DNA of 64,000 nt from Schmidtea nova (Eukaryota). The translations under genes were made by a program, and so were the position numbers. A model generated the notes under the pieces. The model worked only from the letters and a program-made list of their open reading frames with translations. It made no database searches and had not been told where the DNA came from. Positions 11,861 through 60,737 of the stretch are shown piece by piece (within the stretch, counting starts at the first letter, position 1; every line of letters begins with the position of its first letter). Location: positions 324,198,001-324,262,000 of the forward strand of contig CM097882.1 in assembly GCA_044892505.1 (NCBI GenBank). Reading direction: 5' to 3'.

Positions 11861-13329
11861 TTCGTTTACATATCTGTTAGAAGATGGGTTAGTATTAAAA
11901 ATTTTGAAACTAATATATTACATGACAGGGTGCAACAATTACAGGATAAATGTACATATACAAAACAAGGATTGAGTTGAGATTCTCAATGATAATTTCT
12001 GGATTATATTTATTTGTGATGACAACTCTGTTGATTTTGATTATAATATTAACAATTTTATCTTAACCATTTTGTGATCAATTTATTTTATCGTTATGAT
12101 TATAATAATCTTCATGACATCTTTGTAATTATATCAATTTATTTTATGTGATTTATTTTATTATATGTTATAATTTATGTAATTAATCTTATTTTTTATG
12201 GGATTAATTGATTTTTACTAGATGTATATTTTTATTTTAATGGGACTGTGAAAAATATATATTAATAATATAACATGACAAAGATTTAATTGAGGGAAAA
12301 CGCAATTCAAATTTTATATTTCGACAGATTCCTTGACACGATCAACCAAAAATCCCCCTAAAATATAATTAATTAATAATTCTCGCCTTCTGGGTTAATT
12401 AATATTGTTGCTGTTATTTAATTTTACACCAATAGGTGCAAATAATTTTTATTTTATTTTTGAATTCTCATTGAAAGCAGTGTAGTCAGCACGAGGCGTC
12501 GTCAGAAGTGAGAGATCTTCAAATGCAAATTATGAAAGCTCATTAAGAGCAAAACAAAAACAATTTAAAAATAAAATAATAATAATTTAAAAATAATAAA
12601 TAGTGAGTTTTGATAATAATAATAATAATAAAACATAATAATAATATAAATAATATAAATGATTGTAATAATAGAATAATAATAAATATAAATAATTTTA
12701 TTTATTTTGAAAAAGAATTCAGTAATGCCATCACAAATGTCGGGAATCAACAAAAATAACATTTTTGATTTGGTTCAAATATATCATCAATCCCCCGAAA
12801 ATTCAGATTAAATTCTATTTTAACGAATAATAATAATTAATGTTTAGTAAAAAATGATGTTGATGTGTCACACAGAATTTGTTCATTATAGTACTGGGGT
12901 TTTGATTGGCCACCTTTATAAAAACTTCCTACGAGAATATAACCATGGAAAGTTGGGATCCATGTTGGTACTGTATATGGTCGGCGCAAATCAAGTCAGC
13001 GGGTGAGCGGCTTCGAAAGAAACTACTCTTGAATTGCATTTACTTCAGGTTCTCTGGTCGATGGAATACCATGATTTTATGCGTTCCACATATTGTTCCC
13101 TCTTTGTTGGAAAGAAGGTATATCTTCCTTTGTCATCATTTCCATCAATGAACGGGAATACTCTACACACTTTTTTATGATACCATAAACAACACAATTA
13201 ATTACACGAAAACATTTATTTCTTCGGTATTTCAGCTTACATCAAAACGGAATTATTTCCGCCAATAATTCCAGTTAGGAAAGAATTTAATAGTGTCACC
13301 TGAGTTTACAACTGTTGAGAGAACTTCCG

Positions 13330-13690
13330 TTACTGGTGACGTCGACGGTGCCTAGTGCCCATATGAATCTTCTTCGTCATACTATTGACGACTTCGGTTA
13401 CCCTACCAGTGGATTGGGCAACTGATTTTGCTGGCGACGGTCTCATCCATTTCTTGTACGTCAGCGTCCAAATTAAATTGTCTTCTACAAAAGATTTGGT
13501 CACCTGCCTCTCGCAGTTTTTTAACTCTATCTTCACGGTGTCCAATTCTAACTGGACGTCCACTAGTGCCCTGTGAACCCGCTCGGTTTTCTTTAGTTGT
13601 TCCTGCATTTGACTTGGGGAGAAAACATGTTTCTTGCAGCTGCAATATGCGGTGCTTTAATTTTCCCACTTCGATCTTGTGTCCGTTGTT
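13330..13690 (-). pseudogene. ORF-Y copy (one frameshift), unknown cassette family
   Basis: GKLKHRILQLQETCFLPK then, after a shift, QEQLKKTERVHRALVDVQLELDTVKIELKNCERQVTKSFVEDNL...KIHMGTRHRRRHQ; homologous to the 16582 and 39846 ORFs. Confidence 0.7.
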
Positions 13691-14640: not shown

Positions 14641-14868
14641 TTATAAACATGAGAACCAAAATGAAAAACAAAAAGAAATTAGGAATGTTGATGTGTCGGA
14701 TATGGCCGGACCTCTTCTGTATAGATGTTGCGAGTTGGACTGAGGAGAATATCTTTGTAATATCGAAGAGTTTATGGATTTGAACTGTAGGATCCATCTC
14801 GGCCTGCCATTTAGGTCACGGAGATCGAGGAACCAGTTAAGTATTAGGTGTCGGTTTGTTCTTCCCAT
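14641..14868 (-). pseudogene. Additional ORF-X fragment
   Basis: LNWFLDLRDLNGRPRWILQF versus RKWFLQLNDQYGTPHWILSF at 40.8 kb. Confidence 0.65.
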
Positions 14869-15807
14869 TTTCCCACATTAATTCATGCGACGTCACTAAT
14901 TTTAATTCCAAGAATACGATCATCAGATTTTCGAAAGATAAAAATAAACTCCATAATGATATTCTCCCTCAGAGTGACGACAATGATAAGTATTATTGTA
15001 GACAACTTGAGAATTTTCTAAATATATTCATTCGTACAAATAATTTCGTGACGACAATAAACCGGGTAGAAAAGTAAATAATTATCCGCTGCATTGTCCG
15101 AGTGGCCACTTCAACTATCAAGTAGAGTACAGTAGCGAGAAATCTCCTACCATCCAGGTGAAATCGAATTCATAAGTGTCATCGAGACGAGATCAAGTAG
15201 TGCCAGATTGTTTGCACGCGCACTTGAAAGGAGAGAATAATTGAATTTTCAGAGAGTACTGATTGAACAGGGTAAGAGACGGCTAATTGAGTGAGAATGG
15301 TCGAGTGCCCTCGACGGAGTAGAATGTCGAGAAAACATAATTGATTAATATTAAAATCTATAATCATGGTAATTGAATGGAGAAGCGGGTTATTAAGATA
15401 AGCAAATTTATTCCGAGTCGTCACATACAGAATGCGAATTGACAAATATTACTAAATTATAAGGAGTGACTGAAATTACAGGAGTTAAAAAATTTGAAAT
15501 AATGTCCAAAAATTTTTGACTCAGATTTGTAAAACGTGTAGTAATCCTAGTTACCCACCTTTTGATAAATCATGCATTAAATAACTTATATATAATTATT
15601 ATAGTATTTATAAATGGACCGAGTCAGTATTAGAGTGAACACAAACATCAACGAACAACATTTTGAGATGACCGAGCTCGATGGGATTGATAATGACTGG
15701 GTAATGGCTATACCCTTAAAAACGTCCCCACGGAATTGGCGAGGGAAATTCTAACAGAACATTAGGCAACATTCGAAGCAGCGGGAACTGTCCAGCCATT
15801 TAGTTTA

Positions 15808-16065: not shown

Positions 16066-16581
16066 CGAGAACTAATCCCAGCTAGCATCTAGACCTAATG
16101 TCCGATGAGGATTCCTAACAACATCCATGTGTAAAACAATTAAATAAATTATTTAGAAATGGTGTGCTTTTCGTTATATTGTTATTTGTGTTAGTTATAG
16201 TAATAATTTTGAAGTTATTTTAGCTGTAAATTTATTTGTGTTAGTTGCGGTAATTATCATGAGTTGCTCGGGTTGAAATGTTATTGGAGTTAATTACAGT
16301 AACCATCCTAAGTATTTTAGTCATGTTTCCTTTGGTAGATGACAAAGTGACAATCATTGGTAAAGTAGAGTGATATAGAGGATCGATAGAAATTACCACG
16401 AATAAGAGGCGATTTGAATTGAGTAAGGGTTGTTGGCTTTTTGGGAATTGAGAGGGTGAAAGATATTAGATGCGATGTTTAATTTATGTTTACTATAATA
16501 CCGAAAGCAAGACGACGGCCAGTAAGATTCTGATTGATTAAATTTTCTCTAGAAACTGCGATGTCCACAGAGAGAGAATAA

Positions 16582-16974
16582 GAAGGGAAATTAAAGAAGA
16601 GAATAGCCGAATTAGAGGACAGTTATTTCTCGCCAAGCGAGATGAAAGTGGTAAAAGGAAAACTAGGACGTGCCATATGGACGATAGAGAAGCAGCAGAT
16701 CGAGCTCAATGCGGCAAAGATTGAGATGAATAACTGCCGGCGCTTTGTCTCCAAGTCATGCATCACCCAACAATTGGAAACCCTTATCCAGCCGATAACG
16801 TTTGAGAAGTGGTTTCCCACCTTGGAACCAAGGAAAGACAGTACGACGGAGATAGTCGAACCTACCAAGGCGAAAGGAAAGAGACGGAGAAAAACCCATG
16901 CTCAGTGGAGACATAAACTGAGACAGAAGCTAGCAACGGAGTTGGATAAAATACCCGCAGATTCAAATCAATGA
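16582..16974 (+). CDS. ORF-Y copy (open frame, first ATG 16642), unknown cassette family
   Basis: EGKLKKRIAELEDSYFSPSEMK...ELNAAKIEMNNCRRFVSKSCITQQLETLIQPITFEKW...KGKRRRK. Confidence 0.65.
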   Translation, partial: EGKLKKRIAELEDSYFSPSEMKVVKGKLGRAIWTIEKQQIELNAAKIEMNNCRRFVSKSCITQQLETLIQPITFEKWFPTLEPRKDSTTEIVEPTKAKGKRRRKTHAQWRHKLRQKLATELDKIPADSNQ

Positions 16975-17273: not shown

Positions 17274-17316
<43 letters not shown>

Positions 17317-17660: not shown

Positions 17661-17692
<32 letters not shown>

Positions 17693-21017: not shown

Positions 21018-21342
21018 TATTAGCAGCAACGATATCAAAATCATTTTCGGTATCCATTAAATAAATAAAATCAACTACAAAATTTATTAAATTTGAAAAC
21101 TACACTCTTTTCTAGTAATATATAAACAAAAACTTGAAGGCTATTCTTCTTTAATTCTGATGTTGATTTAAATGCTGGCTAATTTAAATGCTGGCTAATT
21201 TTTAAATAAGAAATAACATATATTTTAAGGTTAATTTAATTAATTAATTTAAGATGTTTAAATAAAAATTTATGATATCTGACAAAATACAATTTAAATG
21301 TTTATTAGCAATTTTAATTTAAACGTGAATTCTACCCTTTCA
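21018..21342 (-). repeat. 3' LTR of Gypsy element 1
   Basis: Direct repeat of 25763-26087. Confidence 0.95.
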
Positions 21343-25802: not shown

Positions 25803-26087
25803 TAAATAAATAAAATCAACTACAAAATTTATTAAATTTGAAAACTACACTCTTTTCTAGTAATATATAAACAAAAACTTGAAGGCTATTCTTCTTTAAT
25901 TCTGATGTTGATTTAAATGCTGGCTAATTTAAATGCTGGCTAATTTTTAAATAAGAAATAACATATATTTTAAGGTTAATTTAATTAATTAATTTAAGAT
26001 GTTTAAATAAAAATTTATGATATCTGACAAAATACAATTTAAATGTTTATTAGCAATTTTAATTTAAACGTGAATTCTACCCTTTCA
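25763..26087 (-). repeat. 5' LTR of Gypsy element 1
   Basis: Direct repeat of 21018-21342; contains a duplicated TTAAATGCTGGCTAAT block. Confidence 0.95.
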
Positions 26088-26769
26088 AACAAGATTAAGC
26101 AATAACCACGGAAAAACACGAACAAAACAAGTTACCAAAAAACTCAATAAAGATAGCATAAATTCAAAAAAATGTAAAAGTAAATTGTAAAAATTAAAAT
26201 TAAAGTAGTTAAAATTTATGTAAAAGATAAAATTTTGATAAAAATAAAGAATAAAAATTTATTTTAAAAAAATAAACTTATTTCAGTAAAAAGAAAATAT
26301 TTTTTTAATTAAATAGAAAGAAGCTTCTAGAAACTTTTGTTTTACTGCATCAATTTAATTAAAATGTCTCTGAACTTGGAGAAGAAGAACAGCAAAAATT
26401 GAGAAATAAGATAGTTGTTGGTGTTCCATGTGGTGGTCTATTTTTGTCAGTGTCTAGTCATGAATTACTCTTCCATGATCATATGTCCTTGAGTTACCTA
26501 GATTGTCTCGCGTTGGAACTGCATATGTTAGCGCAAATCAAGTTGGTAGGTGAGCGAATTTTGAAAGTAACTTCTCCCAATTTGCACTTGCTACGGGTTC
26601 ACTGACCACCTCGTTGGTCCATCGTTAGGGTTTACATAATCAGTTGTACTATTTCTTTTATCTATTTCTTTTATCGGGACAAGAAAACTAAGGCTGATTT
26701 CATAATACATTTATTGAAATTTTAAATGGGACAATTTTGGCCAAAAAATTAAATTCTGAAAGATTATTC

Positions 26770-27200
26770 AGGGGGTCGACTCTTCTCTCGGGTTGTTGAG
26801 CAAAAGATCGTCTTTGTCGACGGCGTCTAGACCCGATTCGGTTTTTCCTGACTAAAGAGGTTAATTAAGCATGACTGATCTGGATGACCTTGGCTTCATT
26901 AGTCTCTGGTGGTGGAAGTTTGCAGATAATCTCATCGAGCTCATGGTAAGTCGTTATTGTAACGGTACGTACCTATTTGTCTTACGTAATGATTGAATTT
27001 GGGATCTAAGCTGATATTCAATGAACTACTTTAAAACGTGATTTAACCAGTTTTTTTGGATGTCTAATAGCTTGTCGTGCTTAATCAGTCTTCTGAATTT
27101 CCCTCTCTTGATGAGCAACCGTAAGTCTCAGACCTGCAATCACATGGTCTTTTTATCCTACCGTGCTCATGACTTAATTCCTTTTGTAAATACTGTTAGA
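26770..27200 (-). pseudogene. Degenerate ORF-Y copy
   Basis: VAHQEREIQK / VLK*FIEYQLRSQIQ / RKNRIGSRRRRQRRSFA versus VARQTSEIEN / TMKDFLEQQLKPLIQ / RRNRLGAKRRRERRAYA at 39.9-40.3 kb. Confidence 0.65.
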
Positions 27201-27529: not shown

Positions 27530-27720
27530 TGGATGGAGGGCAAAATCGGACTTCGGTTTCTTTGCGTCTGACGTAGAATTCGGGAGGGATTAGGTGTAGA
27601 AACCCAGTCCATTGAATTCCCAGGCGGGAATGTATCCAAAATATAATACTTTTTGAGGTCGGTCTTCATAGTCCTTGAATATTACGAACCCATATGAAAA
27701 CTTATTAGAGTATTCTTTTC
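27530..27720 (-). pseudogene. Degenerate ORF-X copy
   Basis: PQKVLYFGYIPAWEFNGLGF versus PRWIIYFGFIPSRWLNELGF at 60.45 kb. Confidence 0.65.
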
Positions 27721-28539
27721 CAATGGAGACTGGCCATTGGTGACTACAGTGTCACTAAATCCTTTTTTTCACATTATTTGCCCAGATGGAAAAACAGTGC
27801 TCTCGCTATGAATTTTTTTCATCCATCAGTGCAATTTTTAGTATACTGGTTGTGAGATATCATGATGCAAAGGGTTAAGTGGCTCGAGATACTTCAGTTG
27901 CTGGTGGTATTCTTGAGATGTCAGCGCAATATTCAAGCGGATACCCACGTAGCATCATTGTCCATCGATCTATAATCTAAAATGATGAAGTGTTGGATTA
28001 CCTCGAATTAATTGGTACGAAATCTAAGATCAATAGTCACGAATCATAGGTCGTTGGCGCAGTGTCCTGGTGAAATTTCCTATTGATATTTTGAGATTAT
28101 TATAAATGAATGGTGAACTGGCGATCCAGAGTTGAAAAGTAATTAATATTGTCGAAAATTGTGAGCGGATTTTCAGTGGTTACGGATGTTTGTCGGAATT
28201 ATTTGGTGAGATTGGTTAAATCTGCCGTGCTAAGTGAATTGATCAAATCCGATTTCGTGTTCTCGTTTTGCAATTACTACGGTTTTCCAAACTCGCTCTC
28301 TAAGTGAAATATTTTATGGCCCCAAGCGGAATTATCTCTCCACGAGATCAATACTGGAAACACCCTATGTGCAGCTTTAAACCCTTTCTTCAACCTGTTT
28401 GAAAATTTATGAAGTTAATATGTTCGATTTCACTGCGCCCGCATAACTCTGAGAGTAACAACAGAGCGGCTCAACCTCGTGGCTTTTTCCACAAAAGCTG
28501 TCAACTATTTATGAATTTTACGTGGGAAAAACATACATT

Positions 28540-31900: not shown

Positions 31901-33197
31901 ATAGTTAGATCTTCATATGCTTAAAATTAGAAAACGTATTTTAATGACAAATTTTTTTTTAAAAAAATATCTATCTCAACATTCGTAATGTGATCTAAGT
32001 TGGATTGCATCAACCCATAATAGCTAAGAAATAGTTGCACCATGTTATAAAGAAAAATATGGAAGGGGAAAACGAAAAGAAGATTTGCAAAATTTTTATT
32101 AAATATCATCAAATAATAACAAAAAGAAAATTTACAAAATTTTATTAAATCTTATAAAACAACAACAAAATGCATTTACCCAACTTTTGTTTCAGATTCA
32201 TGAAAGTTATGAATAAATCACCTCTAAATAGGTAGACATAATGAAGAGGGTGAGAAAATTAGTTCCAATCCGGGGGAAAATAACGATTTCGACCCTGCAT
32301 AGACAAGAGCCATAGCAAACTATAGAGTTGATGATTGCAAAGGATTGATGATTTTCTTCGATAAATCGAGCGAGAGAGTGCTCAAGATATATAATTCCAC
32401 CCTCTAGAAGAGTAGAGGCAAAGTATAGGAAAATTAGATCAAAATTTCTTTAGTATTATTGAAATAAATTGGAGTTCGCATTTTGAGGACGATAAAAATT
32501 GGAGAGACATGCTTCACCAACTCTCCGTATCTGTGGTGGTCATGTAATATCTCTGGACTCGGATTAGTATTAAATAATCCCTATATAAGAAGTAAAAATT
32601 TAAATTACAAAAATAAAAATTAATTACTAGTTAGCATATTCCAATTTCTTTCATCTGGGAATCTGAATTCTAAATATAGAATTGCATGAATAAATAATTT
32701 AATATAATAATTAAAAATTACATGATGTAAATGGACCAATAATAATTGAGGCTTTTTGCTTCCCCGTTTATATAGTTTTCTTTTTTTACGGGGGAGTGGC
32801 GTCGTTTTCGCGGGTGTCCTGATTCGATTTGAATTTCCTAAAATAAAATTAAATTTAGAATTAGAAAATATAAGAAATATTCGGAATTAAAAGATATTAA
32901 TAAAACCAAATTCACTTAATATTTAGGCAGTTTATATTGATACTGTTGCCAATGCCTCGGGGAGAATTTAAATATAAATTTATTAAAAATTTTAAAATAA
33001 AATTTATAAATTTCCATAAGAATAGCAAGATAGACACTAGGTGTAATGTTTATAATACAATATAAATATTTGATAGGATGTTTAAATTGTAAAATAAAAC
33101 ATTTTATAAAAAAATTGTTTAAATAAGAAGAATAAACGATTGACAGAAAATTTGAATATTAATATAATTTGATTATCGTATTATTTTAGTTTTTAAT

Positions 33198-33994
33198 ATG
33201 TCAGAAACCCACAACAATGGCGACCACGCGATTTCACGAATCGGAATAAAGGCTCCGACGTTCTACTACTCACAGCCTTCAACGTGGTTCCTACAAATGG
33301 AATCTCAATTTTGCATTGCGTCCATCAGCAACGACGTAACAAAATTCCATCACGTCTAGTCAGTACTGCCAGAGGACGTAGCCACGTCGATCCCAGAAGA
33401 AATAACGTCGCAAATGTCTTATGAAAGTTTAAAATATTACATAATTAAGAGTAAACAAAAGTCCAAAGGAGATGCAATCGATGCTGCTTTAGCAGACGTA
33501 TTACTAAACGATTTGAAACCATCTCAATTATTCAGAAAAATGGAAATTTACATGCGAGATGCTGGAATTAATCACGAACCTTTAATTCGACACAAGTTTA
33601 TGAAGTCTTTACCTGATAATTTAAGAGCTTCATTGGCATGCCACATAGAAAAGCCTCTTAAAGAATTCATCAAATTGGCGGATTCTATTCATGAATATTC
33701 TCCAAAAACCGTCAATGCAATTTCAAATATACCGATGAGAGTTCAATAACAGAGACATTAACAGAATTACGAAATGAAATCAATCTGTTAAAACAAAAAT
33801 ATCATAATTCTAATAGAAATTTTAACATAAAATATTGTTACTTTCACAATAGGTTCGGAAAAATGGCAAAGAAATGTATTACTTTGGCAGATGGTTCAAG
33901 ATGCCTATACAATATTTCGGGAAACGGGAAAGCACTTTCAAATTTATCACCGCGAAAGTGCACGAGAAAGAACGGTGTGAAATATCGTCAATAA
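33198..33994 (+). pseudogene. gag: Gag, CsRn1 type, with a stop (33357-33359) and a frameshift (~33728)
   Basis: IKAPTFYYSQPSTWFLQMESQF...TKFHHV*SVLP and the CHCC-type motif [14 protein letters not shown]. Confidence 0.85.
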
Positions 33995-36738
33995 AAATAG
34001 ATTCTAACGGTATACAGTTCTTAATCGACACAGGCGCTACTGTCTCTTGCCTTCCGTCAAATCAATTCAAACCAACCGAACAATGTTCCATTCAACTTTC
34101 AGCAGCAAATGGGACATCAATTCAATGCAATGGCAACAGAGATATGCAAATAGTCATTAATGACAAAATTTATAAATGGCAGTTTCATGTTTGCAATGTA
34201 TCGCAGCCCATTATTGGCGATGACTTTTTGTCCCATTTCGGATTTTTAATCGACTACAAAACGAATGAGTTTAGTACCGATACTGAACAGAAACATGCCA
34301 GCAATAATATTAACTCAATACAAAGTGCCAACATTTGTCACGAAATCAATTTGAATGGTAACCCAAAGTCTAATGAGTTTCGACGACTCTATGGAGATAA
34401 ACTTAAAGCAGCAAAGCTTTGGTTTGACAAATTGTTGCAAGATGGTAAATGCAGACCATCAAACTCGCCAATATCTTCACCACTAGTAGTAGTCAATAAC
34501 AATAAGTCCATAATTTGCGGTGATTATCGTGAGCTCAATAAATTTACTATACAGGACAAATACCCCATTCCAAGAATCGATGATATCTTTCATATAGTGA
34601 AGGACAAAGTATATTTTTCAACGATTGACCTAGAGAAAGCTTTTCTTCAGGTACCAATAAAAGAAGATGATATCCACAAGACGGCAGTTACTACGCCATT
34701 TGGAATGTTCGAGTTTTTATTTATGCCCTTCGGATTACGGAACGCTCCCGCGACATTTCAACGATTAATGGACAACATACTAAGGCCGTGTCCGTTTGCA
34801 GTTGCTTATCTTGACGATATTATCGTTGCCTCGCGTACAAGAGAAGAACATGAAGACCATCTTCGTATTATTTTCGAGGCGCTCAAAAATTCAAATCTTA
34901 AAACGAACATAGAGAAATGTCAACTGAACAAGGAAGAGGTTGATTTCTTGGGCCACCATATTTCAAAAAATGGAATATCGCCAATAAGAAGTAAGGTGCA
35001 AGCAATCCAAGAATACGATAAGCCCACTACGCTTAAACAATTGAGGCGATTCTGCGGCATGGTAAATTTTTATAACCGATTTATTAAAAACGCAGCCCAT
35101 GTCATGTCACCACTGTACGATCAAATAAAAAGGAAAAGTGCCAAAATCCGATGGACCGATGATGTTACCGAAGCATTCAACAATACCAAAGAAGTACTCA
35201 TGCATGCAACTCAGCTTAGCATTTTTGACGATTCCAGTCCAGCTTGCATACGGACAGATGCATCCGGCGAAATTATTGCAGCTGTTTTGGAAAAAAAGGG
35301 TAAACCTATAGCATTTTTTAGTAAACACCTTTCAGATTGCGAGAAAAAGTATAGCACATACGACAGAGAACTCCTCGCAGTATACCGGGCAATCAAACAT
35401 TTCCGATACTATATGGAAGCAGTTACCTTTACAGTTTATACGGACCATCGTCCGCTGACACATAGTCAGCCAAAGGAACCGTCTCATAGGCAATGGAAAC
35501 AGCTACAATATATATCAGAATTTAACTGTACTTTGGAATATTGTCCCGGAGTTAAAAATACCGTTGCTGACGCACTATCAAGATCAACTATCCTACAAGT
35601 CGATCTCAAAAGCAATAACACGTTTCCTTGGTCCACTGACGTAATTCTGAAGAAACAAAGAGACGAACTACAACACGATGCCGAGGAAATCCTTCTAAAT
35701 AACAGTAGACTGGTACTGCCACCATCTCTCCGCAAAGAAACATTTCAGAACATTCATAATCCGGCTCACCCAGGTTCAAAAAGAACAATATATCTAATAG
35801 GGCGATCTTACGTGTGGCATCAAATGGCCAAAGACATAAAGAAATGGTGTCTCGAATGCGATGCGTGCTCTAAAGCTAAGATCTATAAACACACAAAATC
35901 TAGAATACAGCCGTTACCTGCTGCCGGAAGGTTTTGCTCCTTACACATAGATATAGTAGGTCCGTTGAAAACTATCAAGAATAAATCATACATACTGACG
36001 ATGATTGACAGACAAACATCATGGCCGGAAGCTATTCCAATTTCAAATATAAATGCAGAAACAATTGCAAAAACATTACTAGACGTTTGGATTACAAGAT
36101 TCGGACTGCCAACAGAAATTGTTTCAGATAGAGGAACACAGTTCACTGGCGCAATCTTTCAGGAACTGTGTAAACACATGGGAATTAAAAGTATCCACAC
36201 GACGGCTTACCACCAACAAGCAAACGGGAAGGTGGAAAGATTCCACCGAAATATGAAAGCTTCACTAATGGCATCATCAACAAGTGCTCGACAAAGTTGG
36301 TTACAAAATCTTCCTACAATCATGATGTATTTGAGAAACTGTCCAGACGACTCGGGTTATTCGCCAGCACAGATGGTATTCGGAGCAGATCTAGCACTCC
36401 CAGGTTTTATCTTTCACAAACCGGAAAACTCAACGCCAGAAATAATAAAATCTATAAGCGAAGGAATACAACAATATAAGAAACAGCCGATCGTTTTCGA
36501 ATCCAAGGTGCCACCATCACTTGAGAAAGCGGAATACGTCTATATTCGAAAAGAAGTAAAAAAATCGTTAGAAGTTCCATATTCGGGTCCCTACAAGATT
36601 ATTCACAAGGAACCGAAGTTTTTCAAGCTAGAAAACGGTGAAACCGTTTCAGTGGACCGACTGAAGGCCGCCTACCCGGTATTCGACGCGACGCCGGATC
36701 TGGGTGGAGAGAATTGTAATGTTTATAATACAATTTAA
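33874..36738 (+). CDS. pol: Pol (protease, RT, RNase H, integrase)
   Basis: LIDTGA, YLDD, RTDAS...RELLA, HNPAH...[24 protein letters not shown]; stop lies inside the 3' LTR. Confidence 0.95.
33919..33961 (+). promoter_or_regulatory. Candidate -1 ribosomal frameshift signal
   Basis: G GGA AAC (33919-33925), 6 nt spacer, perfect 8 bp stem GCACTTTC (33932-33939) / GAAAGTGC (33954-33961). Confidence 0.75.
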
Positions 36739-38649
36739 ATATTTGATAAGATGTTTAAATTGTAAAATAAAACATTTTATAAAAAAATTGTTTAAATAAG
36801 AAGAATAAACGATTGACAGAAAAATTGAATATTAATATAATTTGATTATCGTATTATTTTAGTTTTTAATATGTCAGAAACCCACAACACTAGGTATAAG
36901 GGATTGAAAATTTTAAATCGAGCTTTTAATAAAAGGTAAAAATACAGAAATCGAAATTTTGCAATCAATAATTATTTAGACAAAAAAATAATTACAATCA
37001 AAATATGTGTGAATAAAGGATTATTGATTCCCGAATTGAGATTTGATAGGCATATCCATGGAAAGACTCGCGATCGTATATGTGAGAAGTCTTTAACTTA
37101 TTGTAATAATGAATGAAATAATTGATTTTTGTGTATAATGATAATTTTTGTAATTATTGTACATTCACCATTCTTGATATGTCTTAAAAACATTTGAACA
37201 TTTTAGCAATGAATCCAGTGCAACAGTTAGAGGATATTCACAAGATATTGATCGAGAATGCAACAAACAGGTGGATGTTCGCAAACAGTGAGCGCCGAAA
37301 AACTTCGAAACTATGATTGACCATATGAGGAAGTTGGAAGATTTAAGAAATTTTTAATGAAAAATTTTAAAAATTAATTTTAAGATTGATTTTTAAAATA
37401 GAAAAATATTTTTAATTAGAAAAATATTTTTTGAAAATTTGTTTAAATAACAAATTATTAAGAAAACATTATTTTGATAATTATATTTTTCTGAAATAAA
37501 AGTAATGGATTCAAGTTGTTGTAAAACTGATTTTAATGTTTTAAAGGATGAAAATCCTAATATGGTGGCAGCGATAAACAATGAAGCAATCGCCGAAAGA
37601 TTGCTACCAAAGGTGATGACCTGGAAAAGTTTATTAAAAGATGCGAAATTTATTTCGATGCCAAGGGAATCACGCAGAAGAGAGATCAGGAAAGATTAAC
37701 ATCTTGCATGATTGATAAGGATCTCTTGGAAGTATATGCCAAAACACTGAAAAAGCAGACGGATTCCAGGCTAGGTTGCGATTGGCATTCGATCGCGAAA
37801 GAGATGTATAAAAGGATCTGCAAAGCTTGTTGAATTACAAGCGGAAGGGTGAAGAAATAGAAACATATTTTAAAAAGGTGGGTTACCTTGTTGATAGGTT
37901 GTTTGTTTTTGTTTTCTTGCCTGCTTTTTTTTGTCTGATTACTCTTTCTCATTTCTCATTTCTTTTTATTTCCGTTTTCTTTTCTGAGTTGCCATTAGTC
38001 TTATCATTCGTTATGACGATTTTCCTCCAGGTAATTTTATTTATTTATTAGTAAATTGTTATTTAGGTATCCTCAACAGTTTTGTAATATTAAAATTAAT
38101 TAGATAAATAATAATTATTGAAATTAACCTTTCAACAAAATTGGCAGTCTTATTTTTCATATGATCGAATTTAAATCATGTGATATAGTTGAAGATCCGT
38201 ACCTGGTTCCGTATCTGCCGACAGTATCAACCTTTTGTTCAGCTGGCCTTTAAAATTATAATTTAATAAAATAATTCTTACTTCTTACTTTATCTTTTAT
38301 ATATTATTCGAATTAAGTTTAGTTTTTAAAATTTATATTAGCAGATTTAAACAATAAATTTATTATTTCCTAATTTGGTGATAAAATTAGAGTTTGTAAA
38401 ATAAAAATAAATGTTTTTTTCCTTAAATTTTAAATGCAGATTAATATTTTTAAAAATGTTTTATCTATTAATTATCATAAATTGCAATATTAGCAATGTT
38501 TATATGCAAGTGTTTTTGATGCTCGGTATGATTCCTTTGATGCAATGATGAACTTATAGTGATGTGGACTATTTATATTGAATTTCCGATTAAAATCTTG
38601 TTGAATGTTTATAGATAAATTGTTTAAGAAAGGAAAAAATAAGCATTAC

Positions 38650-38850
38650 ACCTTCTATCGGTAGCCCTTGGACCCAGGAGATATTCAGTCAATCATAGTT
38701 TCGAATTTTTGACGATTACCCACCCATTTGTTGCATTACCAACGATACATTGTAACGGGCAACAAGATGGTCAATATAATGTTTTATGTGCTGAGATTTT
38801 GATGTGAGCCATAGCAACGTCAATCTCATATTGACGGTCAACAACCTACC
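38650..38850. repeat. Diverged dispersed repeat, copy flanking the 39-42 kb cassette on the left
   Basis: CCTTCTAT..TAGCCCTTG.ACCC...GTTGCATTACCAAC...TAATGTTTTATGTG.TGAG...CATATTGACGGT shared with 42490-42710. Confidence 0.75.
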
Positions 38851-39845
38851 ATTTTGATCATATACCTATCATGATGTTACAAATTCCTTTTTTATTTTGT
38901 TGTGTAGAAAACTGAGATTTGTTATAATAAAGAGATAATACAGCACGTAGAGAGCGCAAAAGAAGTAAATTAAAAACCCTATGAGCTAACACAACAAATA
39001 AAACATAGTAATCACAAAACACAAAAATAAATAAATAAAACACGTTTAGAAAATTTAAATGAACAAAAACGCATTAAGTATACGTAGATAAAACACAAAT
39101 ATAACATAAAAACAGCAATTAAAAAATAAAATTACAAGAAAAAATTAACATACTTTTAGAAAGAAAATTTCGATTTTTACCCTTAAAACCCATAAAATAT
39201 GAGAGAAATTTGTTTTAGATAAAGAATTAATAAATTAAACTAAATTAAAAAAAACTTTAATTTAAAAGTAAAATTTTAGATTAAAAATAAATTATTTAAA
39301 GTTTGATTAAAATTTTATACAAAAGTAATAATTTGATTTTGCGGAAAATTATTAAATTTTATTTTGGAAAAATCAAAAAATTCCTTCTAGAACAATTTGT
39401 TTTAATACATCAACCAAAACAATAGACAAAACCTCGTATATACTCCGCCATCAAATTACAAAAAATCAGAATTTGCATTTAAACAACTCTGAATAACATT
39501 TCACTAAGCAGACCGATGTGAGATTTTATCATCAGAAACTATTATAGAGACAATTAGCACTCATCCGAAAAACAGAACCATCGTTTGCTATTGACAGAAT
39601 CGCCAGCAAACACTAGGGAAGCTCGCAGTTCGAATCCACTACACAATCAATGATATGATTCCTAGACTCAAAACGTTAAACTGAACAGTGTTTAACTCCG
39701 AACAGTGTACCGGAACCCAGAAGATTACAGAACTTAACTGTTATCGAGAAATGTAAAAAATTTCTCCATGTTCAGTATGGGACTTTCAGAGTCATGCCCT
39801 TTGATAGTCTCATACCATGTATTTTTATTAGTTTTTTACGTTTTC

Positions 39846-40415
39846 TCATATTTGCTGGTTCGTTGGAATGGTCTTTTGCCTCTCAGATAAACCACTGAGC
39901 AGGTCTACTTCTATTCCAAGCTTTACCGCATAAGCCCTTCTCTCTCGACGTCGCTTGGCTCCTAGACGGTTTCTCCTCTTTGTTCTCGTTGGCACAACCT
40001 TGGTCGGCTGCGTTATCGATATTTCTCTTTCCTGGGTTGTAATAACGGCCTCTTCCGTCTGTGTTTCCATGTTCTTGCGGATTGGAGTCACCCATTGATC
40101 GAACGTGCTCACTTGAATCAGCGGCTTCAGCTGTTGTTCAAGGAAATCTTTCATGGTGGCTTTTAGACAATTGTTTAACTCCAGTCGCACTGCGGTGTTT
40201 TCCCGAGCTTGCTCTTCCAACGCTCTCTCTGCACGGTCGCGTCGCTTATAGATCTCTTTCACCTTCTCAGTGCAAAACCAAGTTCTCTTCAGGTTTTCTA
40301 TTTCGGATGTCTGTCGAGCTACTAGTCGTTCTAACATACATACGCGTCTCTGTACTAGTCGGTGTTTGTTCATATCTACGGTTTTCAGTAGTTGCTCCAT
40401 CGTTTTCTCTCTCAC
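39846..40415 (-). CDS. ORF-Y, most intact copy (189 aa; helical N-terminus, Arg-rich C-terminus)
   Basis: Uninterrupted ORF with homologues at 11.4, 13.3, 16.6, 26.8 and possibly 59.5 kb. Confidence 0.7.
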   Translation of the reverse strand: MREKTMEQLLKTVDMNKHRLVQRRVCMLERLVARQTSEIENLKRTWFCTEKVKEIYKRRDRAERALEEQARENTAVRLELNNCLKATMKDFLEQQLKPLIQVSTFDQWVTPIRKNMETQTEEAVITTQEREISITQPTKVVPTRTKRRNRLGAKRRRERRAYAVKLGIEVDLLSGLSERQKTIPTNQQI

Positions 40416-40506
40416 TTCTCCTTAGCAATCACATTCCATCATATCAAACAAAATCAGTCAGACAAGACAATTTATACATTTATTAGTGAAGATTATGACA
40501 CTATCA

Positions 40507-40881
40507 CTAAGTTCCTTTACAATTATCCCAATCAACCCAATCCTGATCACACGGACTATTCACCTTCCTGACTCCATTTGGCCAAAAATGATCAGCATTC
40601 GGATTCCAACATAAGTGATTTTCATAGATAAACACTCCCCACATCCGAACGTCTAGTGTCCATGTGGCCTGGTCCTTACAAATATTCCAGGGTGAGTTCA
40701 AGAATGCCCGTCTTTCACCTGTGATCACGTCTCGGGGTTGGTCAAGTAATACAAATCCCAATCCATAGAAGATGTGTCTGGGGTTTGTCATAAACGATAA
40801 TATCCAGTGAGGAGTACCATACTGATCATTGAGCTGAAGGAACCATTTCCGATAGAGTCCATGAGTTATCTTCTTCCCACC
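40507..40881 (-). CDS. ORF-X C-terminal half (open frame, first ATG 40791)
   Basis: RKWFLQLNDQYGTPHWILSFMTNPRHIFYGLGFVLLDQP... Confidence 0.65.
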   Translation of the reverse strand, partial: GGKKITHGLYRKWFLQLNDQYGTPHWILSFMTNPRHIFYGLGFVLLDQPRDVITGERRAFLNSPWNICKDQATWTLDVRMWGVFIYENHLCWNPNADHFWPNGVRKVNSPCDQDWVDWDNCKGT

Positions 40882-41074
40882 TTATCGTGACTGAATAAGG
40901 AGCTGGGCTTTCCTTTATCTCGGGGTCCGCGTATTCCCGTTTCAAATGTCTCAAGCATCTCTCCGGCCTAGTCCGGATGATATTTGGCACTTGTGTAGGC
41001 CCTCTCGGTTCCTTCTTTAATGTTATAACCCGTCTACGGTTACGGTTTTTGTATGCATATAGTTTCTTTGACAT
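40826..41074 (-). CDS. ORF-X N-terminal half
   Basis: NRNRRRVITLKKEP...IKESP versus NAQRRRVFGPLKKLP...RNESP at 14.4 kb; overlaps the C-terminal half, which is in the +1 frame. Confidence 0.6.
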   Translation of the reverse strand: MSKKLYAYKNRNRRRVITLKKEPRGPTQVPNIIRTRPERCLRHLKREYADPEIKESPAPYSVTIRWEEDNSWTLSEMVPSAQ

Positions 41075-42489
41075 TATAACTACAACGAAGGAGTGTATTA
41101 ATTAGTCTCATCATGCTCATTTTCATCATTCTACATCACACTCACACCTTGAGCACTCGTACATCATACTGCTTTTGCTTATATCATCACACTCTAGACA
41201 ACACTCTATGGTTGCATTCATTACATTCACAACATATTTCTATCTCATCGCTCGCATTCATTTGCGTGGTTCGTTAGTTCACCAATATCAGTTACATCAC
41301 ACCACCGCACAATTAGGTCTCATTACGACATTTCAATAAATATTTTTAAGTTGCGGATCTTATGGTATTAATTAAGTTCATTGTCATATTTCAGTATGTA
41401 ATTGCAAGCTGTAGGTATCAGGTTAGTGAAGTATCATTTTCAACACTGGATCATCATTCCTTCCTCGGGAAGTACAGAATTATTCTACCTGAATCAGAGT
41501 ATGATTAATCACACATCCGTCATTTCAAACATCCTGTCGCATCAATCACCTTGTCGGAAACTCTGGAGCTCCGGCATCATCCTATCTCAATCGGAATAAT
41601 TTGGTATAGTTTAGTAATGTGGTTTCAAATGGGATTCTGCATTTTACGACTTTTAATTCCATCATTTCTGCAATTGTACAAAAATTCTCATATGTCTTTG
41701 ATAGTTCATCATGTTGTTTTGATGGTGGGAGGCGAACGATCGCTCCACGACATGTTACTCAATTTTTATTCTCAAATTTTTATTCTCTAACGATGTTCCA
41801 TGCACAACCTCTCCTCCCGAGTTATTAGTGCTTCTACGCCATGTCAGTCAACCCTTATAAGGTGCTGCGCTTAGAGGCCCATAACGCCCGGCGGATCCGA
41901 CGACCTTCGGGATACCTTACTCATTTTGATAGAAAAGCATGAGGGTTTAAAATCAGAAATAATACAAGTTGTCAAAGATTTACCTTTATTTCCACAAATG
42001 GTTCGGTTACAATGATTTTCCACAACAAGTTGATTCACACTTGGTATAAAATGACAATGCACTGGTAAAGAATGACTTTTACTGGTAAAAATTTACAACT
42101 ACTATTCTGAGGCGTACGAGCATGACGCAAAAGGAGACAAGAAAACCGCTTACTGCGGGAAATTTGTAAGACGTACATCGAATCGATAGACCTTACTGTG
42201 CTATGAATTAAAAACAAGATATGTAATAAAAATTGTAAATAATCTTAGCTGTTTTATATAATATTCGTTTTATAATTTTGTTTGTGCTAAAAGATTTTGC
42301 AAATTATAATTTCCTCACATACAAATTTATTTTCTTTATTATCGATTATTATAATTGAAGTAGTTAATAGTAATTATATGAATATTATATTAAAATCAAC
42401 AGCATAACACTAACAATAATTTTTACGTAAGTATAATTGAAGTAAATAGTGTAGCAATTCATATTAAGGACTCAAAATGGGCATAAACC

Positions 42490-42710
42490 TTCTATTGATA
42501 GCCCTTGAACCCACCGTTATGTTCTGTCAATCATAATTTCGATTTGTCGACGTTCACTGTTTGCGGACATACACCCACTTGTTGCATTACCAACATTACA
42601 TGGTTACGGGCAACACAATGGTTTTGATTAATGTTTTATGTGATGAGTTGTAGATGGGAGCCACAGCAGCGTCAAGGTCATATTGACGGTGAACAAACCA
42701 CCAATTTTAA
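42490..42710. repeat. Diverged dispersed repeat, copy flanking the 39-42 kb cassette on the right
   Basis: Homologous to 38650-38850 (same orientation) and to 37250-37330 (inverted). Confidence 0.75.
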
Positions 42711-44598: not shown

Positions 44599-47500
44599 GG
44601 ATAAATATCCTTGTTTAATAATATTAACATCAATGATTTACTTGATTATCCAATTCGTAACAATGTTTATATTTCAATGGGGAGTTTTGTTCGAACAACC
44701 CGTTCAATTTTAGGTCGCTTTAATGGAATGAATGTTGGGCATATACCGCACATCGGTTTCCCGTTATCCGGTAGATTTAATACCCATAACAATTGTCGTA
44801 GCGAAATTGAACCAACGCCTTTAACATCGAGACTAAATAAATTCCAAATATTTATTTATTTCAAAGATTTTCATTAATTCAACATTTCTCATTATTAAAG
44901 AATTTTAAAAAGTAAGAAAATTAAACTTATCGCAAATATAAAGAAACAGAACTGGTAAATGATAACAACCCGTTTGGTGAATTGTTCTATAATGAAGAAT
45001 CAAAGAACCGATAACGTAAGGTGACTTCAAATTCAGAATTATCGCACGTGCTCAAATAATACCTAGTAAATAGTTATGTAAAAGATAAGGGAACTTAAAA
45101 TAATAGCATAAATAGCTATTTTTAAACAACATACCGTCAATCCAGTCCAATTAATTCAACTACAAAGAATTTTAAAAATGTGTAACTTTGTATCAGCGGT
45201 TTCCAAACTGTGGGTCGTGTAATAACCTCAAGGGTAGTGAAAATTTAAATTTATGTTTTAATGTCTAGACATGAATCTCTTCAAAAAAATACTTAAAATA
45301 ATCTCTTTAGAATTTAAATGTTTAAATAGCAGAATATTAAAAATTAGGTACTTTTCGGTTATCTCGACCTCATCAAAAAATGAAAAATTTCAATTTTAAA
45401 AATCTTCTTAAACCANNNNNNNNNNNNNNNNNNNNNNNNNNNNNNNNNNNNNNNNNNNNNNNNNNNNNNNNNNNNNNNNNNNNNNNNNNNNNNNNNNNNN
45501 NNNNNNNNNNNNNNNNNNNNNNNNNNNNNNNNNNNNNNNNNNNNNNNNNNNNNNNNNNNNNNNNNNNNNNNNNNNNNNNNNNNNNNNNNNNNNNNNNNNN
45601 NNNNNNNNNNNNNNNNNNNNNNNNNNNNNNNNNNNNNNNNNNNNNNNNNNNNNNNNNNACCTTTGATCTTTTTTTATTATTATTATCAATAATTCTCATA
45701 ATGACTATAGATCAAAAATTTTTTTTATAAACAATAACACAATATTTCGGCACAGCCTTTATCAAGTGTGTATTTCTATCGTTATATTTACTTAATCCTA
45801 AATAGTAGCCTTAATTATTTTTTTAATATTTTATAATGATTTTATTGGATGAAAAAATTTATTTTAATTTTTTTGTGCGAATTGAATGTTGGACGGTTTG
45901 TATTTTTTTATGAAAAAAGTCTCGGAAGCTAATCTTTGTAATGAATTTTTGAATCCCTCTTTTAGAATCTGGCATTTTGTTTCTTCTATAGATGGAGTTG
46001 TTTTATGTACTTTCTCCCAGTGTTCGTAATAATTACTGGTTTTGATTTTAGTGTGTTCATTAAGTCGGGTGCGAAAAGTTCTATGTGTTTCTCCTATGTA
46101 AGTAGCGTCACATTTTTGGCAAGAAAGTTTATATACTATATTTTTGGAAAAGCAAAAGCATCGGCTTGTGGAACGGCAAAGACATTTATGTTTGGAGATG
46201 TTGGAAATTGGTGGCTTTCGGAGTTGTGATTTTAACGGTGCGGAGGTTATGAACGTTGGACGGATGTGGATAGGCAAATCTGTTTGATTAAAAATGTTGG
46301 TGATTTTGTTGGCTGTAGTGTCATTAAGGAAAGGTAATCTTAGATATGTTGTGTGTTTGTTATTGTTATTGTGTTTCTGGCGTTTCCTATTGTTGCGTTT
46401 ATTGTGGTATGGTTCGTTAAGGAAATATTTCTTTACAAATTCTTCAGGGTATCCAAGAAAACATCCTCGCTCTAGGACCATCTTTTGTTCCTCCACCTAA
46501 CCAGAAAGATTTAGAAAAAGCCGAAGTCATCACTAACGCCTCTTATAAGCCTAAGAAGACAAATAGGATACCATCTAAAACCAATTTCAACCACCAAATC
46601 TTCAAGTTTAGCTGAAAAGCACAATCATCTTCTGGATCCAAATCGTAGAACATATCCAAATATGCCTGTCTTTTCGACTGAACTTGAAGAAAAAATCAGC
46701 TGTTTAGAAACTAAAGTCAAAACTTTAGTCAAAGAACAAATTATCTTTCTTGAAAAACATTGCTCAACACAAAATTCTTTCACTTCAAACATAAAGAAAA
46801 TTAAGAATTTCCAAAGACTTCACAATTCTTCCATCAGATAAAACAAATCGACTAATTGCTCTTGACACAGAACAATAAAATACTCTATTTGAAGAACATC
46901 TCTCGAACTATGAACCGATAAACAAAATAATCTTACCTGCATCAACTCAAATTTTATACAATAAGAAACTGTCAACACTTGCAAATAAACAAATTAACCT
47001 TCAAATCAAAGATTTACTTTTAAAATGCAACTGCAGTGAGCCTTTACCTAGTAATATGACTATGTTACCTAAAGACCACAAAAGTCCTTTAAAAGGTAGA
47101 CCTCTTGTATCTGCAATTGACACTCCTTCCACAACACTTTCTAAAGTTCTTTCAGAAATCCTAAAAACACTTTTGCCTTTGGTTCCTTCTCATCTTAAAA
47201 ACACAACTGAATTCGTCTCCGAAATTACAAATACGTCTCTTCCGTTAAACGCAGGACAACAGTACTTCTCGGGATCTCTTGATGTTTCCAATCTTTACGG
47301 ATCTATTCCTCTTCACGGAGAGAATAATATTTTCGACATCGCAGCTTCTTTCTTTGCAACTCATAAAGCCAATACTGACCTCGCAGACTTAACTAAACAA
47401 GACTTTATAGAACTTCTAAAATTAGCAATAAATTCAGATACTGTCATAATTAAAGAAAAACCATTCAAACAAATTCATGGATTAGCCATGGGTAATAACC

Positions 47501-59959: not shown

Positions 59960-60737
59960 ATTCTATTCGGTCATCTTGCGAGTCTTGCGATTTGGAAAAG
60001 CAAACCGTCGTTGAATTTGGAATTCTTACTTACGTAGCGTTTTTGTTGGGTCGTACTCGACCACCTAGATAATAGTGCCAGGTATCGTCTGACACACGAC
60101 AAACGTAGAAGTATCCTTATAATTTTCACCCACTTGGAAGGACCATTCACGTCTTCCGAGCCAATAGACTTTCTTTACTAGTGCTTCGCAAACAGTGAAG
60201 GTCCCAGGCCTCTCTTAGCTGGAATTATCCATTCTTTGTCCCTATCGATTGGACGTGAAATGAATTGCGGTTCTGTCTTTACAATTATTTGGGTGTGGGA
60301 AATCGTTGATTTATTCCCCATCTCTAATTTAAATATAATTCTTATTGCTGGCGTATTGGTGATTACTTCAATCGGATTTCATGATGGACGACTCTCCTAT
60401 TTTAATGTTCCTGAGGTTATCAAAGAGAATGAACCCCAATTCGTTTAGCCATCTACTTGGGATAAAACCAAAATAAATTATCCAGCGAGGAAAATAGGAT
60501 GGGTCTCGTATTAAAACAAACTACATGGGTGTAGTGTCGGATGGTGATTAAATCTCGGGAGAGGGCTCCTGGGGGCCCCCTCTCTATCAAACGTTTTCGG
60601 TATGGTTCTGCTCTCACATCGCCACTTCCACCCACTGTCACTGAGCTCTGCCGACGTTCCGTGGGAGATCTTTGAGTGGCCAGGAGACTGGCACTTTTAT
60701 CTGGCCATTTCGGAAATATTTGATCTTTCTCTGACAT
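59960..60737 (-). pseudogene. Degenerate ORF-X copy
   Basis: WPLKDLPRNVGR (~60670), M*FVLIRDPSYFPRWIIYFGFIPSRWLNELGFILFDNLRN (~60530-60405). Confidence 0.65.

What the first reader, a model, noticed from the sequence alone, without database searches (positions are those of the whole stretch)
39846..40415. ORF-Y family: coiled-coil-like body with an Arg-rich tail
Seen: GKLKKRIAELEDSYFSP (16.6 kb), GKLKHRILQLQETCFLP (13.65 kb), EIENLKRTWFCTEKVK (40.28 kb), MT*FTPEKM (11.75 kb), KTSSPEKV (59.59 kb, weak); then E(L/M)(N/K)NC, F(L/I)E.QL..LIQ and a W; and finally (N/H)R(L/I/M)G..RRR.RR (39.95, 26.82, 13.35 kb). A helical oligomer plus a basic nucleic-acid-binding tail is the layout of nucleocapsid- or Rev-like proteins (inference).
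Basis: partly seen in the sequence, partly recalled or inferred. Interest (0 to 1): 0.75.

Follow-up and report, generated by a model that had tools for sequence, protein, structure and literature searches.

The report
Orphan two-ORF repeat in flatworm DNA
ORF-Y is a real but orphan small protein family (helical front half, arginine-rich rear) that travels with a second small ORF in a roughly 2-2.6 kb repeated, mostly decayed unit in a flatworm genome; it is most likely the remains of an unclassified selfish or virus-derived element, and nothing ties it by ancestry to capsid, Gag or Rev proteins.

Summary
The ORF at 39846-40415 (-) is real and intact: 189 codons, 184 from the first ATG. It has significant relatives in the window at 16.6 kb, 13.3-13.7 kb and, for the tail only, 26.7-26.9 kb.

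ORF-Y lies downstream of a second small family, ORF-X, on the same strand in three copies. Each copy sits in a 2-2.6 kb island. The X and Y frames have GC 0.37-0.50, against 0.26-0.31 for host-like ORFs. Only the 40-kb copy keeps an intact Y.

AlphaFold2 predicts two long helices (residues 2-96), a disordered linker and a basic helix. The Arg-rich cluster recurs in four copies. A canonical heptad signal was not detectable.

No relatives were found:
- Pfam, PDB sequences, Foldseek (PDB, BFVD) and the word search gave nothing.
- A profile scan of 1.84 billion representative proteins gave nothing.
- No reverse transcriptase, integrase or transposase remnant lies in any island.

Best reading (confidence 0.5): remnants of diverged insertions of a lineage-specific element with no enzyme of its own. 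Its Y protein probably binds nucleic acid. The main rival is a fast-evolving host gene cluster. Interest is modest.

The parts
39846..40415 (-). ORF-Y, copy E: the only intact member (189 codons from GTG, 184 from the first ATG at 40400). Predicted helices 2-46 and 49-96, disordered 111-148, basic helix 145-179.
40507..40866 (-). ORF-X, copy E: an open stretch of 119 codons, Trp-rich, about 100 nt upstream of Y on the same strand. The conserved X motif lies upstream of the first ATG of this frame, so its start is unclear.
   Evidence: z 8-10 against copies B and F
16561..16974 (+). ORF-Y, copy C: broken by 1 in-frame stop if read from its upstream ATG. About 29-33% identical to copy E.
13330..13669 (-). 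ORF-Y, copy B: broken by 1 frameshift. The tail is shorter than in E.
14641..14877 (-). ORF-X, copy B, upstream of Y(B) on the same strand. It starts with its own ATG about 10 codons before the conserved motif.
26703..26906 (-). ORF-Y, copy D: only the Arg-rich tail is recognisable. The body upstream is decayed by several stops and frame changes, which could not be counted reliably.
   Evidence: z 11 against E
27593..27751 (-). ORF-X remnant, copy D, upstream of Y(D) on the same strand.
   Evidence: z 9.8 against copy F
60371..60520 (-). ORF-X remnant, copy F. No recognisable Y lies downstream.
12964..13056 (-). 94-nt block downstream of Y(B), 74% identical to 26512-26604 downstream of Y(D). 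No folding signal.
26512..26604 (-). Partner of the 94-nt block, downstream of Y(D).
39086..39475 (.). AT-rich repeat R, about 370 nt past the stop of Y(E). Related copies lie at 26177-26353 (about 350 nt past Y(D)) and 29208-29595 (upstream of X(D)), all in the same orientation.
39600..42200 (-). GC-richer island (0.34-0.47) holding copy E, flanked by DNA of GC 0.14-0.23. Comparable islands lie at 12.9-17.1 kb (B+C), 26.4-28.4 kb (D) and 59.0-61.6 kb (F).

Best explanation
ORF-Y is the downstream one of two small linked reading frames. X has about 120 codons and is Trp-rich. Y has 130-190 codons. Together they belong to a repeated unit of roughly 2-2.6 kb.

The unit occurs at least five times in this 64-kb stretch of a flatworm genome. 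Four of the five copies are on the same strand.

I read the copies as remnants of separate insertions of already diverged members of a lineage-specific selfish element, either a transposon-like or an endogenised virus-like one. The element carries no recognisable enzyme of its own.

Y would be its small structural or regulatory protein. An alpha-helical front half (two long helices with a conserved core) would serve self-association or partner binding. A flexible linker follows. A conserved arginine-rich segment would bind nucleic acid and/or direct the protein to the nucleus.

Shown: the family, the X-to-Y linkage, the helix prediction, the conserved basic cluster, the foreign composition, the decay of most copies, and the absence of detectable relatives.

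Inferred: mobility, oligomerisation, nucleic-acid binding.
For: 1. Family and linkage. Y copies are significant at four sites and X copies at four sites. X precedes Y on the same strand in copies E, B and D.

2. Foreign composition. The X and Y frames have GC 0.37-0.50 and GC3 0.41-0.56. The host-like ORFs (PRP38, RNase H2 subunit) have GC 0.26-0.31 and GC3 0.23-0.26, and the window as a whole has 0.317. Each copy sits in a discrete island flanked by very AT-rich DNA.

3. Divergence with open frames. The copies are only about 30-50% identical in protein, yet long open stretches persist: 189 codons in E and 130 in C. At GC 0.46 a random frame stays open for 189 codons with probability of about 3e-5 (my arithmetic from base composition). 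So the copies diverged while coding and stopped being maintained later, as expected of diverged lineages inserted separately.

4. Decay. Four of the five copies are broken or reduced to fragments.

5. Shared non-coding flanks beyond Y. A 94-nt block is shared by B and D. Repeat R lies at the same distance and orientation past Y in D and E. Whole units were therefore copied, not just ORFs.

6. Age relative to other elements. A young LTR element with identical LTRs has inserted into the flank of copy D, so the X/Y copies are older residents of a transposon-rich region.

7. Protein features. Helices at 2-96, a disordered linker and a basic helix. One 20-residue block has net charge +10, and the basic cluster is conserved in four copies.
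Against: - No terminal repeats, target-site duplications or other hallmark of transposition could be defined. Copy D is flanked by R/R and copy E by a different repeat, S/S, with no consistent pattern.
- No enzyme domain is present in any island: 107 open fragments were scanned.
- No two copies in the window are closely similar, which is unusual for an active transposon family.
- No relative exists in 1.84 billion representative proteins, viral ones included.
- Five copies in 64 kb could equally be a local gene cluster.
- Only one 64-kb window could be examined. Genome-wide copy number is unknown.
Confidence: 0.5

Rival explanations
1. X and Y are a fast-evolving, lineage-specific host gene family (or a two-gene cassette) expanded by local duplication. 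It follows birth-and-death dynamics: one functional Y (copy E) and several pseudogenes.
For: - There are five copies within 64 kb, four on the same strand, at spacings of roughly 13 kb.
- One copy keeps an intact 189-codon ORF, with an AATAAA hexamer 17 nt past its stop.
- Host genes lie in the same region.
- No transposition hallmarks were found.
- No enzyme domains were found.
Against: - GC and GC3 are far above those of the host-like ORFs in the window.
- No homologue appears in any annotated flatworm proteome within the 1.84-billion-protein library.
- This reading needs anciently diverged paralogues (about 30% identity) to have been kept coding for a long time, and then four of five lost while still compositionally distinct.
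- No wider duplicated blocks were seen between the copies beyond the unit itself.
Confidence: 0.25
2. X and Y are accessory or structural ORFs of a larger element of a known class (an LTR-type non-autonomous element or another retroelement or DNA transposon). Its enzymatic part is supplied in trans or has been lost from these copies.
For: - Direct repeats flank two copies: R/R about 2.85 kb apart around D, and S/S about 3.6 kb apart around E.
- The region is full of LTR and Penelope-like elements.
- Y has the general look of a small nucleic-acid-binding retroelement protein.
Against: - The flanking repeats differ between copies and show no clear LTR ends.
- S has a third, inverted partial copy elsewhere, so it looks like an independent dispersed repeat.
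- No RT, RNase H, integrase or transposase remnant lies in or beside any island.
- Y shows no likeness to the gag proteins of the window's LTR elements.
Confidence: 0.15
3. ORF-Y is a true homologue of a viral capsid, nucleocapsid or Gag protein, of a Rev-type regulator, or of a delta-antigen-type protein.
For: Only the layout supports this: a helical part plus an Arg-rich part in a protein of about 185 residues.
Against: - Pfam gave no hit at E<=1 to any such family.
- PDB sequences gave none. Foldseek gave none against PDB, and nothing better than E 3 against BFVD viral models.
- The profile scan of 1.84 billion proteins gave none.
- Y has no zinc knuckle.
- No ribozyme or other RNA family was found in the window.
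Confidence: 0.03
4. The resemblance between the ORFs is a chance effect of charged, helix-prone composition.
Against: - Shuffle tests that preserve composition give z 10-17, with 0 of 1000 shuffles reaching the observed scores.
- The invariant positions include Cys, Trp and Asn, not just charged residues.
- A second, linked family (X) recurs in the same order.
Confidence: 0.01

Closest known systems
ORF1 proteins of non-LTR retrotransposons (L1-type ORF1p)
   Same: A small protein with an N-terminal helical self-association region and a basic nucleic-acid-binding region, encoded by a repeated selfish element. This comparison rests on established knowledge of ORF1p. It is a functional analogy only.
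   Different: - Pfam gave no match to any ORF1 family.
- No RRM-type middle domain is predicted.
- Y is the downstream ORF, and no reverse-transcriptase ORF follows it.
Arginine-rich-motif regulators of complex retroviruses (Rev/Rex type)
   Different: - No sequence or fold match was found.
- No provirus context exists: the unit has no LTR-gag-pol-env.
- The Arg-rich segment lies near the C-terminus after a long disordered linker.
Delta-antigen-type proteins of small circular RNA agents
   Same: Similar size (about 190 residues), an N-terminal helical oligomerisation region and later Arg-rich RNA-binding motifs. This is recalled from general knowledge and is only a lead.
   Different: - Pfam gave no hit to the delta-antigen family.
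- No delta-type ribozyme or any Rfam family is present in the window.
- The unit is DNA in a genome and has a second ORF.
Gag/nucleocapsid of LTR retrotransposons (examples in this window at 24723-25802 and 33414-33749)
   Same: Both are small basic proteins of repeated elements in the same genome.
   Different: - Y has no CCHC knuckle and no capsid-domain match.
- hhalign probability against both window gag proteins is 0.1%.
- Y is not upstream of a pol gene.
Endogenous viral elements of flatworms (for example integrated densovirus NS1 genes, PMC13055364; RNA-virus-derived elements, PMC9241645)
   Same: Virus-derived, decayed, multi-copy coding remnants are documented in flatworm genomes.
   Different: - No NS1 or other viral domain was found in any island.
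- X and Y match no viral protein in the libraries searched.

Membership tests
Retroelement Gag / nucleocapsid | Capsid-domain or retrotransposon-gag sequence signature | tested here: not met
   Pfam scan at E<=1 gave no gag or capsid family. hhalign against both gag proteins of the window gave probability 0.1%.
Retroelement Gag / nucleocapsid | CCHC zinc knuckle(s) in the basic region | tested here: not met
   No zf-CCHC hit. The basic tail of Y(E) contains no Cys or His (sequence). The window's real gag gives zf-CCHC at E 1.6e-8.
Retroelement Gag / nucleocapsid | Position upstream of pol, between LTRs | tested here: not met
   No RT, RNase H or integrase remnant lies in any of the five islands. 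The flanking direct repeats are inconsistent between copies.
Rev-type ARM regulator | Sequence or fold likeness to the family | tested here: not met
   No hits in Pfam, PDB sequences, Foldseek PDB or BFVD.
Rev-type ARM regulator | Arginine-rich motif | tested here: met
   One 20-residue block holds 11 K/R against 1 D/E. The basic cluster recurs in copies E, D, C and B.
Rev-type ARM regulator | Encoded within a complex retroviral genome | tested here: not met
   No proviral context.
Non-LTR retrotransposon ORF1p | ORF1 family signature, and a downstream ORF2 with endonuclease and reverse transcriptase | tested here: not met
   No Pfam match. No RT remnant lies downstream of any Y copy.
Delta-antigen-type protein | Delta-antigen sequence signature and flanking self-cleaving ribozymes | tested here: not met
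   No Pfam hit. No Rfam family reached gathering score anywhere in the window.
Canonical coiled coil | Heptad periodicity of hydrophobic residues over at least 28 residues | tested here: inconclusive
   Long helices are predicted. The crude a/d score does not exceed shuffles for E and C (p 0.23 and 0.17) but does for B (p 0.017). The 3.5-residue periodicity is not significant. No dedicated coiled-coil predictor or multimer model was available.
Transposable element (any class) | Defined termini, target-site duplication and dispersed copies | tested here: inconclusive
   Multiple copies with shared non-coding flanks are present, but no consistent termini or duplications were found. Genome-wide distribution cannot be examined from one window.

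The most novel reading that the evidence does not exclude
The X/Y units are endogenised copies of several diverged lineages of an unknown small virus-like or satellite-like agent of flatworms. That agent's only proteins would be a Trp-rich X and a helical, arginine-rich Y, a delta-antigen-like nucleic-acid-binding protein by analogy only. The intact Y at 40 kb may be retained by the host.
Probability: 0.12. Interest if true: 0.7.

Novelty: new variant of a known kind. Interest (0 to 1): 0.33.

Why it matters
If the best reading is right, this is an unclassified repeat family of a flatworm genome. Its two proteins have no detectable relatives anywhere. That is useful for repeat annotation, and it adds one more case of a small helical, arginine-rich protein carried by a selfish element.

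It would matter more if a genome-wide census showed either of two things. One is a virus-derived origin, which would mean a new kind of small agent in flatworms. The other is a conserved, expressed intact copy, which would mean a domesticated gene.

As it stands it is a solid but ordinary orphan-repeat finding. The link to capsid, Gag or Rev proteins is analogy, not ancestry.

Tried and rejected
Searches that found nothing:
- Word-index protein search with Y and with the X alignment.
- Whole-library HMMER profile search with the Y alignment: 0 hits at E<=1e-3.
- Pfam on Y, X and neighbouring ORFs.
- Pfam on all 107 open fragments of the islands: only two chance-level matches.
- PDB sequence search: only a chance coiled-coil match at E 0.21.
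- Foldseek of the Y model against PDB (0 hits) and BFVD (best E 3).
- Exact-product look-ups of three window ORFs: not on record.
- Rfam and tRNA scans of the window: nothing.

Ideas tested and dropped:
- The AlphaFold2 model of X was too poor (pLDDT 47) to justify a fold search.
- I took the ORF at 15808-16065, upstream of Y(C), for an X copy by eye. The shuffle test rejects that (z about 0).
- I considered that the Arg-rich 82-codon ORF at 40826-41074 might be the N-terminus of X, giving a capsid-like layout. It has no relatives in the other copies, and X(B) starts with its own ATG just before the conserved motif.
- The LTR idea was not upheld. R flanks D on both sides but E on one side only. 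S flanks E only. Neither shows clear LTR ends.
- The 94-nt block shows no RNA or DNA folding signal and has no further copies.
- Burro-type giant planarian elements (PMC6431247) encode one huge polyprotein and do not fit.

Full report
**What the window is**

The 64-kb window is AT-rich (GC 0.317) and comes from an animal genome.

- An intronless PRP38-family ORF (Pfam 7.8e-29) finds its best matches in flatworms: nine of the ten best hits are trematodes or cestodes. Identity is only 53-61% in those hits, and 65% in one partial hit. The source is therefore a flatworm that is not itself in the protein library. I did not determine it further.
- Other host-like pieces are an RNase H2 subunit ORF at 57818-58108 and a HECT fragment at 49885-50373.
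- The window is rich in transposons. One LTR element spans 21017-26061 with identical 300-nt LTRs and open gag and PR-RT-RH-IN ORFs.
- A second, small LTR element spans 33042-36889 with 98% identical LTRs.
- Penelope-like RT and GIY-YIG pieces lie around 45.8-48.3 kb.
- The five runs of N (45.4-50.6 kb) were left as they are.

**The observation**

The ORF at 39846-40415 on the minus strand is real: 189 codons from a GTG, 184 from the first ATG.

Its relatives in the window are as follows.

| Site | Strand | Evidence |
|---|---|---|
| 16.6 kb | + | tblastn E 1e-10, 29% identity over 139 residues |
| 13.3-13.7 kb | - | tblastn E 2e-5 |
| 26.7-26.9 kb (Arg-rich tail only) | - | tblastx E 4e-6 |

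Composition-preserving shuffle tests give z values of 10 to 17, with 0 of 1000 shuffles reaching the observed scores.

The three-way alignment has 14 invariant columns. The tail motif at 26.8 kb closely resembles that at 39.95 kb.

**A linked second family**

About 100 nt upstream of Y at 40 kb, on the same strand, lies an open stretch of 119 codons (40507-40866). I call it X. It is Trp-rich.

It has significant relatives at 14641-14877 (-), 60371-60520 (-) and 27593-27751 (-) (z 8-10). X precedes Y on the same strand in three copies:

- E at 40 kb
- B at 13-15 kb
- D at 27 kb

Copy F at 60 kb has X only. Copy C at 16.6 kb has Y only.

The ORF upstream of Y(C) looked similar to X by eye but fails the shuffle test.

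In copies B, C and E, Y has its own ATG. X and Y therefore look like two cistrons rather than exons of one frame. I could not test splicing.

**State of the copies (counts only)**

| Copy | State |
|---|---|
| Y(E) | intact |
| Y(C) | 1 in-frame stop if read from its upstream ATG |
| Y(B) | 1 frameshift |
| Y(D) | only the tail recognisable; the rest broken several times, not countable |
| Y(F) | not recognisable |
| X(E) | open, but its conserved motif lies upstream of the first ATG of the frame |
| X(B) | short ORF with its own ATG |
| X(D), X(F) | short remnants |

These rest.

**Composition and extent of the unit**

Each copy sits in an island of about 2-2.6 kb with GC 0.34-0.47, flanked by DNA of GC 0.13-0.26.

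| Sequence | GC | GC3 |
|---|---|---|
| X and Y frames | 0.37-0.50 | 0.41-0.56 |
| Host-like ORFs | 0.26-0.31 | 0.23-0.26 |
| Other transposon ORFs | 0.33-0.40 | 0.29-0.37 |

Likeness extends past Y into non-coding DNA. A 94-nt block, 74% identical, lies downstream of Y in B and D. An AT-rich repeat, R, lies 350-370 nt past Y in D and E in the same orientation.

R also occurs upstream of X(D), so D is flanked by R/R. Copy E is instead flanked by another repeat of about 235 nt, S (38636-38855 and 42474-42707, 75% identical). S has a third, inverted partial copy. No consistent terminal structure emerges.

The young LTR element at 21-26 kb has inserted into the flank of copy D, so the X/Y copies are the older residents.

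None of 107 open fragments of at least 45 codons, on either strand of the islands, matches any Pfam domain beyond chance.

**The protein**

AlphaFold2, run with the three-sequence alignment, gives mean pLDDT 66.

- Two long helices at residues 2-46 and 49-96. The ten-residue block means there run from 70 to 93, and most are 79 or higher.
- A short helix at the conserved Trp.
- A low-confidence, probably disordered stretch at 111-148.
- A helix at 145-179 that carries the basic cluster.

One 20-residue block has 11 K/R and 1 D/E.

A crude heptad score does not exceed shuffles for copies E and C. Hydrophobic periodicity is weak at 3.6 residues (p about 0.03-0.05 per helix) and absent at 3.5. So the front half is helical and amphipathic, but a canonical coiled coil is not shown.

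**Relatives elsewhere**

None was found.

- Pfam, PDB sequences, Foldseek against PDB and viral models and the word-index search gave nothing.
- A profile search of every one of 1.84 billion representative proteins gave no hit at E<=1e-3.
- X likewise gave nothing, and its model was too poor to search with.
- Profile-profile comparison of Y with the two gag proteins of the window is null.

**Interpretation**

The copies are only 30-50% identical in protein yet keep long open stretches and a composition unlike the host's. At GC 0.46 a random frame stays open for 189 codons with probability of about 3e-5 (my arithmetic). They therefore diverged while coding and were abandoned later.

Several points together fit best with separate insertions of diverged members of a lineage-specific selfish or virus-derived element without an enzyme of its own (confidence 0.5):

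- the X-to-Y linkage
- the shared non-coding flanks
- the decay of four of five copies
- the transposon-rich setting

Y would be its small helical protein with an arginine-rich segment that binds nucleic acid or targets the nucleus. That last step is inference from layout.

The rivals are:

- a fast-evolving host gene cluster (0.25)
- accessory ORFs of a larger element of a known class whose enzymatic part is elsewhere (0.15)
- true kinship with capsid, Gag, Rev or delta-antigen proteins (0.03)
- chance (0.01)

I did not scan the public viral-contig or metagenome collections with the X/Y profiles. Those scans fetch the DNA around matches. The step is listed under referred steps.

My scripts printed outer bounds, scores and counts only.

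The slip: while reasoning I recalled from memory a few short motif strings. These were the export signals of one viral regulator and one cellular inhibitor, a stretch of a PRP38 protein, and a PCNA-binding box. The PRP38 and RNase H2 assignments rest on Pfam. No claim about an export signal is made.

Noticed in passing
40507-40866(-), 14641-14877(-), 27593-27751(-), 60371-60520(-): A second orphan family (ORF-X, Trp-rich, about 120 codons) lies upstream of ORF-Y on the same strand. It has no Pfam or database relatives.
   Followed up: yes
12964-13056 and 26512-26604: A 94-nt block, 74% identical, lies downstream of Y in copies B and D only. It is better conserved than the coding parts. It shows no folding signal and has no other copy in the window.
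   Followed up: partly
39086-39475, 29208-29595, 26177-26353: An AT-rich repeat R (about 390 nt) occurs in one orientation. It lies at the same distance past Y in copies D and E and also upstream of copy D.
   Followed up: partly
38636-38855, 42474-42707, 37257-37321 (inverted, partial): A dispersed repeat S of about 235 nt. Two direct copies bracket the copy-E island 3.6 kb apart (75% identical). It may be a SINE- or MITE-like element.
   Followed up: partly
21017-26061: An LTR retrotransposon with two 300-nt LTRs that are 100% identical and open gag (zinc knuckle) and PR-RT-RH-IN ORFs. It is a very recent insertion, sitting in the flank of X/Y copy D.
   Followed up: partly
33042-36889: A compact LTR element (3.85 kb, LTRs 98% identical) with a 954-codon PR-RT-RH-IN ORF and a 111-codon upstream ORF that matches no Pfam family.
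   Followed up: partly
45864-46496(-) and 47056-48303(+): Penelope-like pieces (RVT_1, GIY-YIG). The two ORFs share a long, nearly identical stretch in inverted orientation. The runs of N lie among them and were left untouched.
   Followed up: no
52383-54608(+): Three consecutive or overlapping ORFs (243, 149 and 388 codons; the first and last have GC about 0.41-0.42) with only a weak HTH_23 hint. This may be an unclassified DNA-transposon-like block.
   Followed up: no
55395-56186(-): An intronless PRP38-domain ORF with a divergent Q/N-rich C-terminal half. It is only 53-61% identical to its ten best hits (nine of them flatworm PRP38; 65% in one partial hit), so it may be a retrocopy or a divergent paralogue.
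   Followed up: partly
15808-16065(+): An ORF of 85 codons with the highest GC of the window (0.50), just upstream of Y(C). It is not related to X by shuffle test and has no Pfam match.
   Followed up: partly
17073-17857: Tandem repeats of about 390 nt (93% identical) whose minus strand reads as poly-Asn/Asp ORFs, directly beyond copy C.
   Followed up: no
2517-2996(-), 20023-20418(+): Two further ATG-started ORFs (159 and 131 codons) without any Pfam match and unrelated to X or Y.
   Followed up: no
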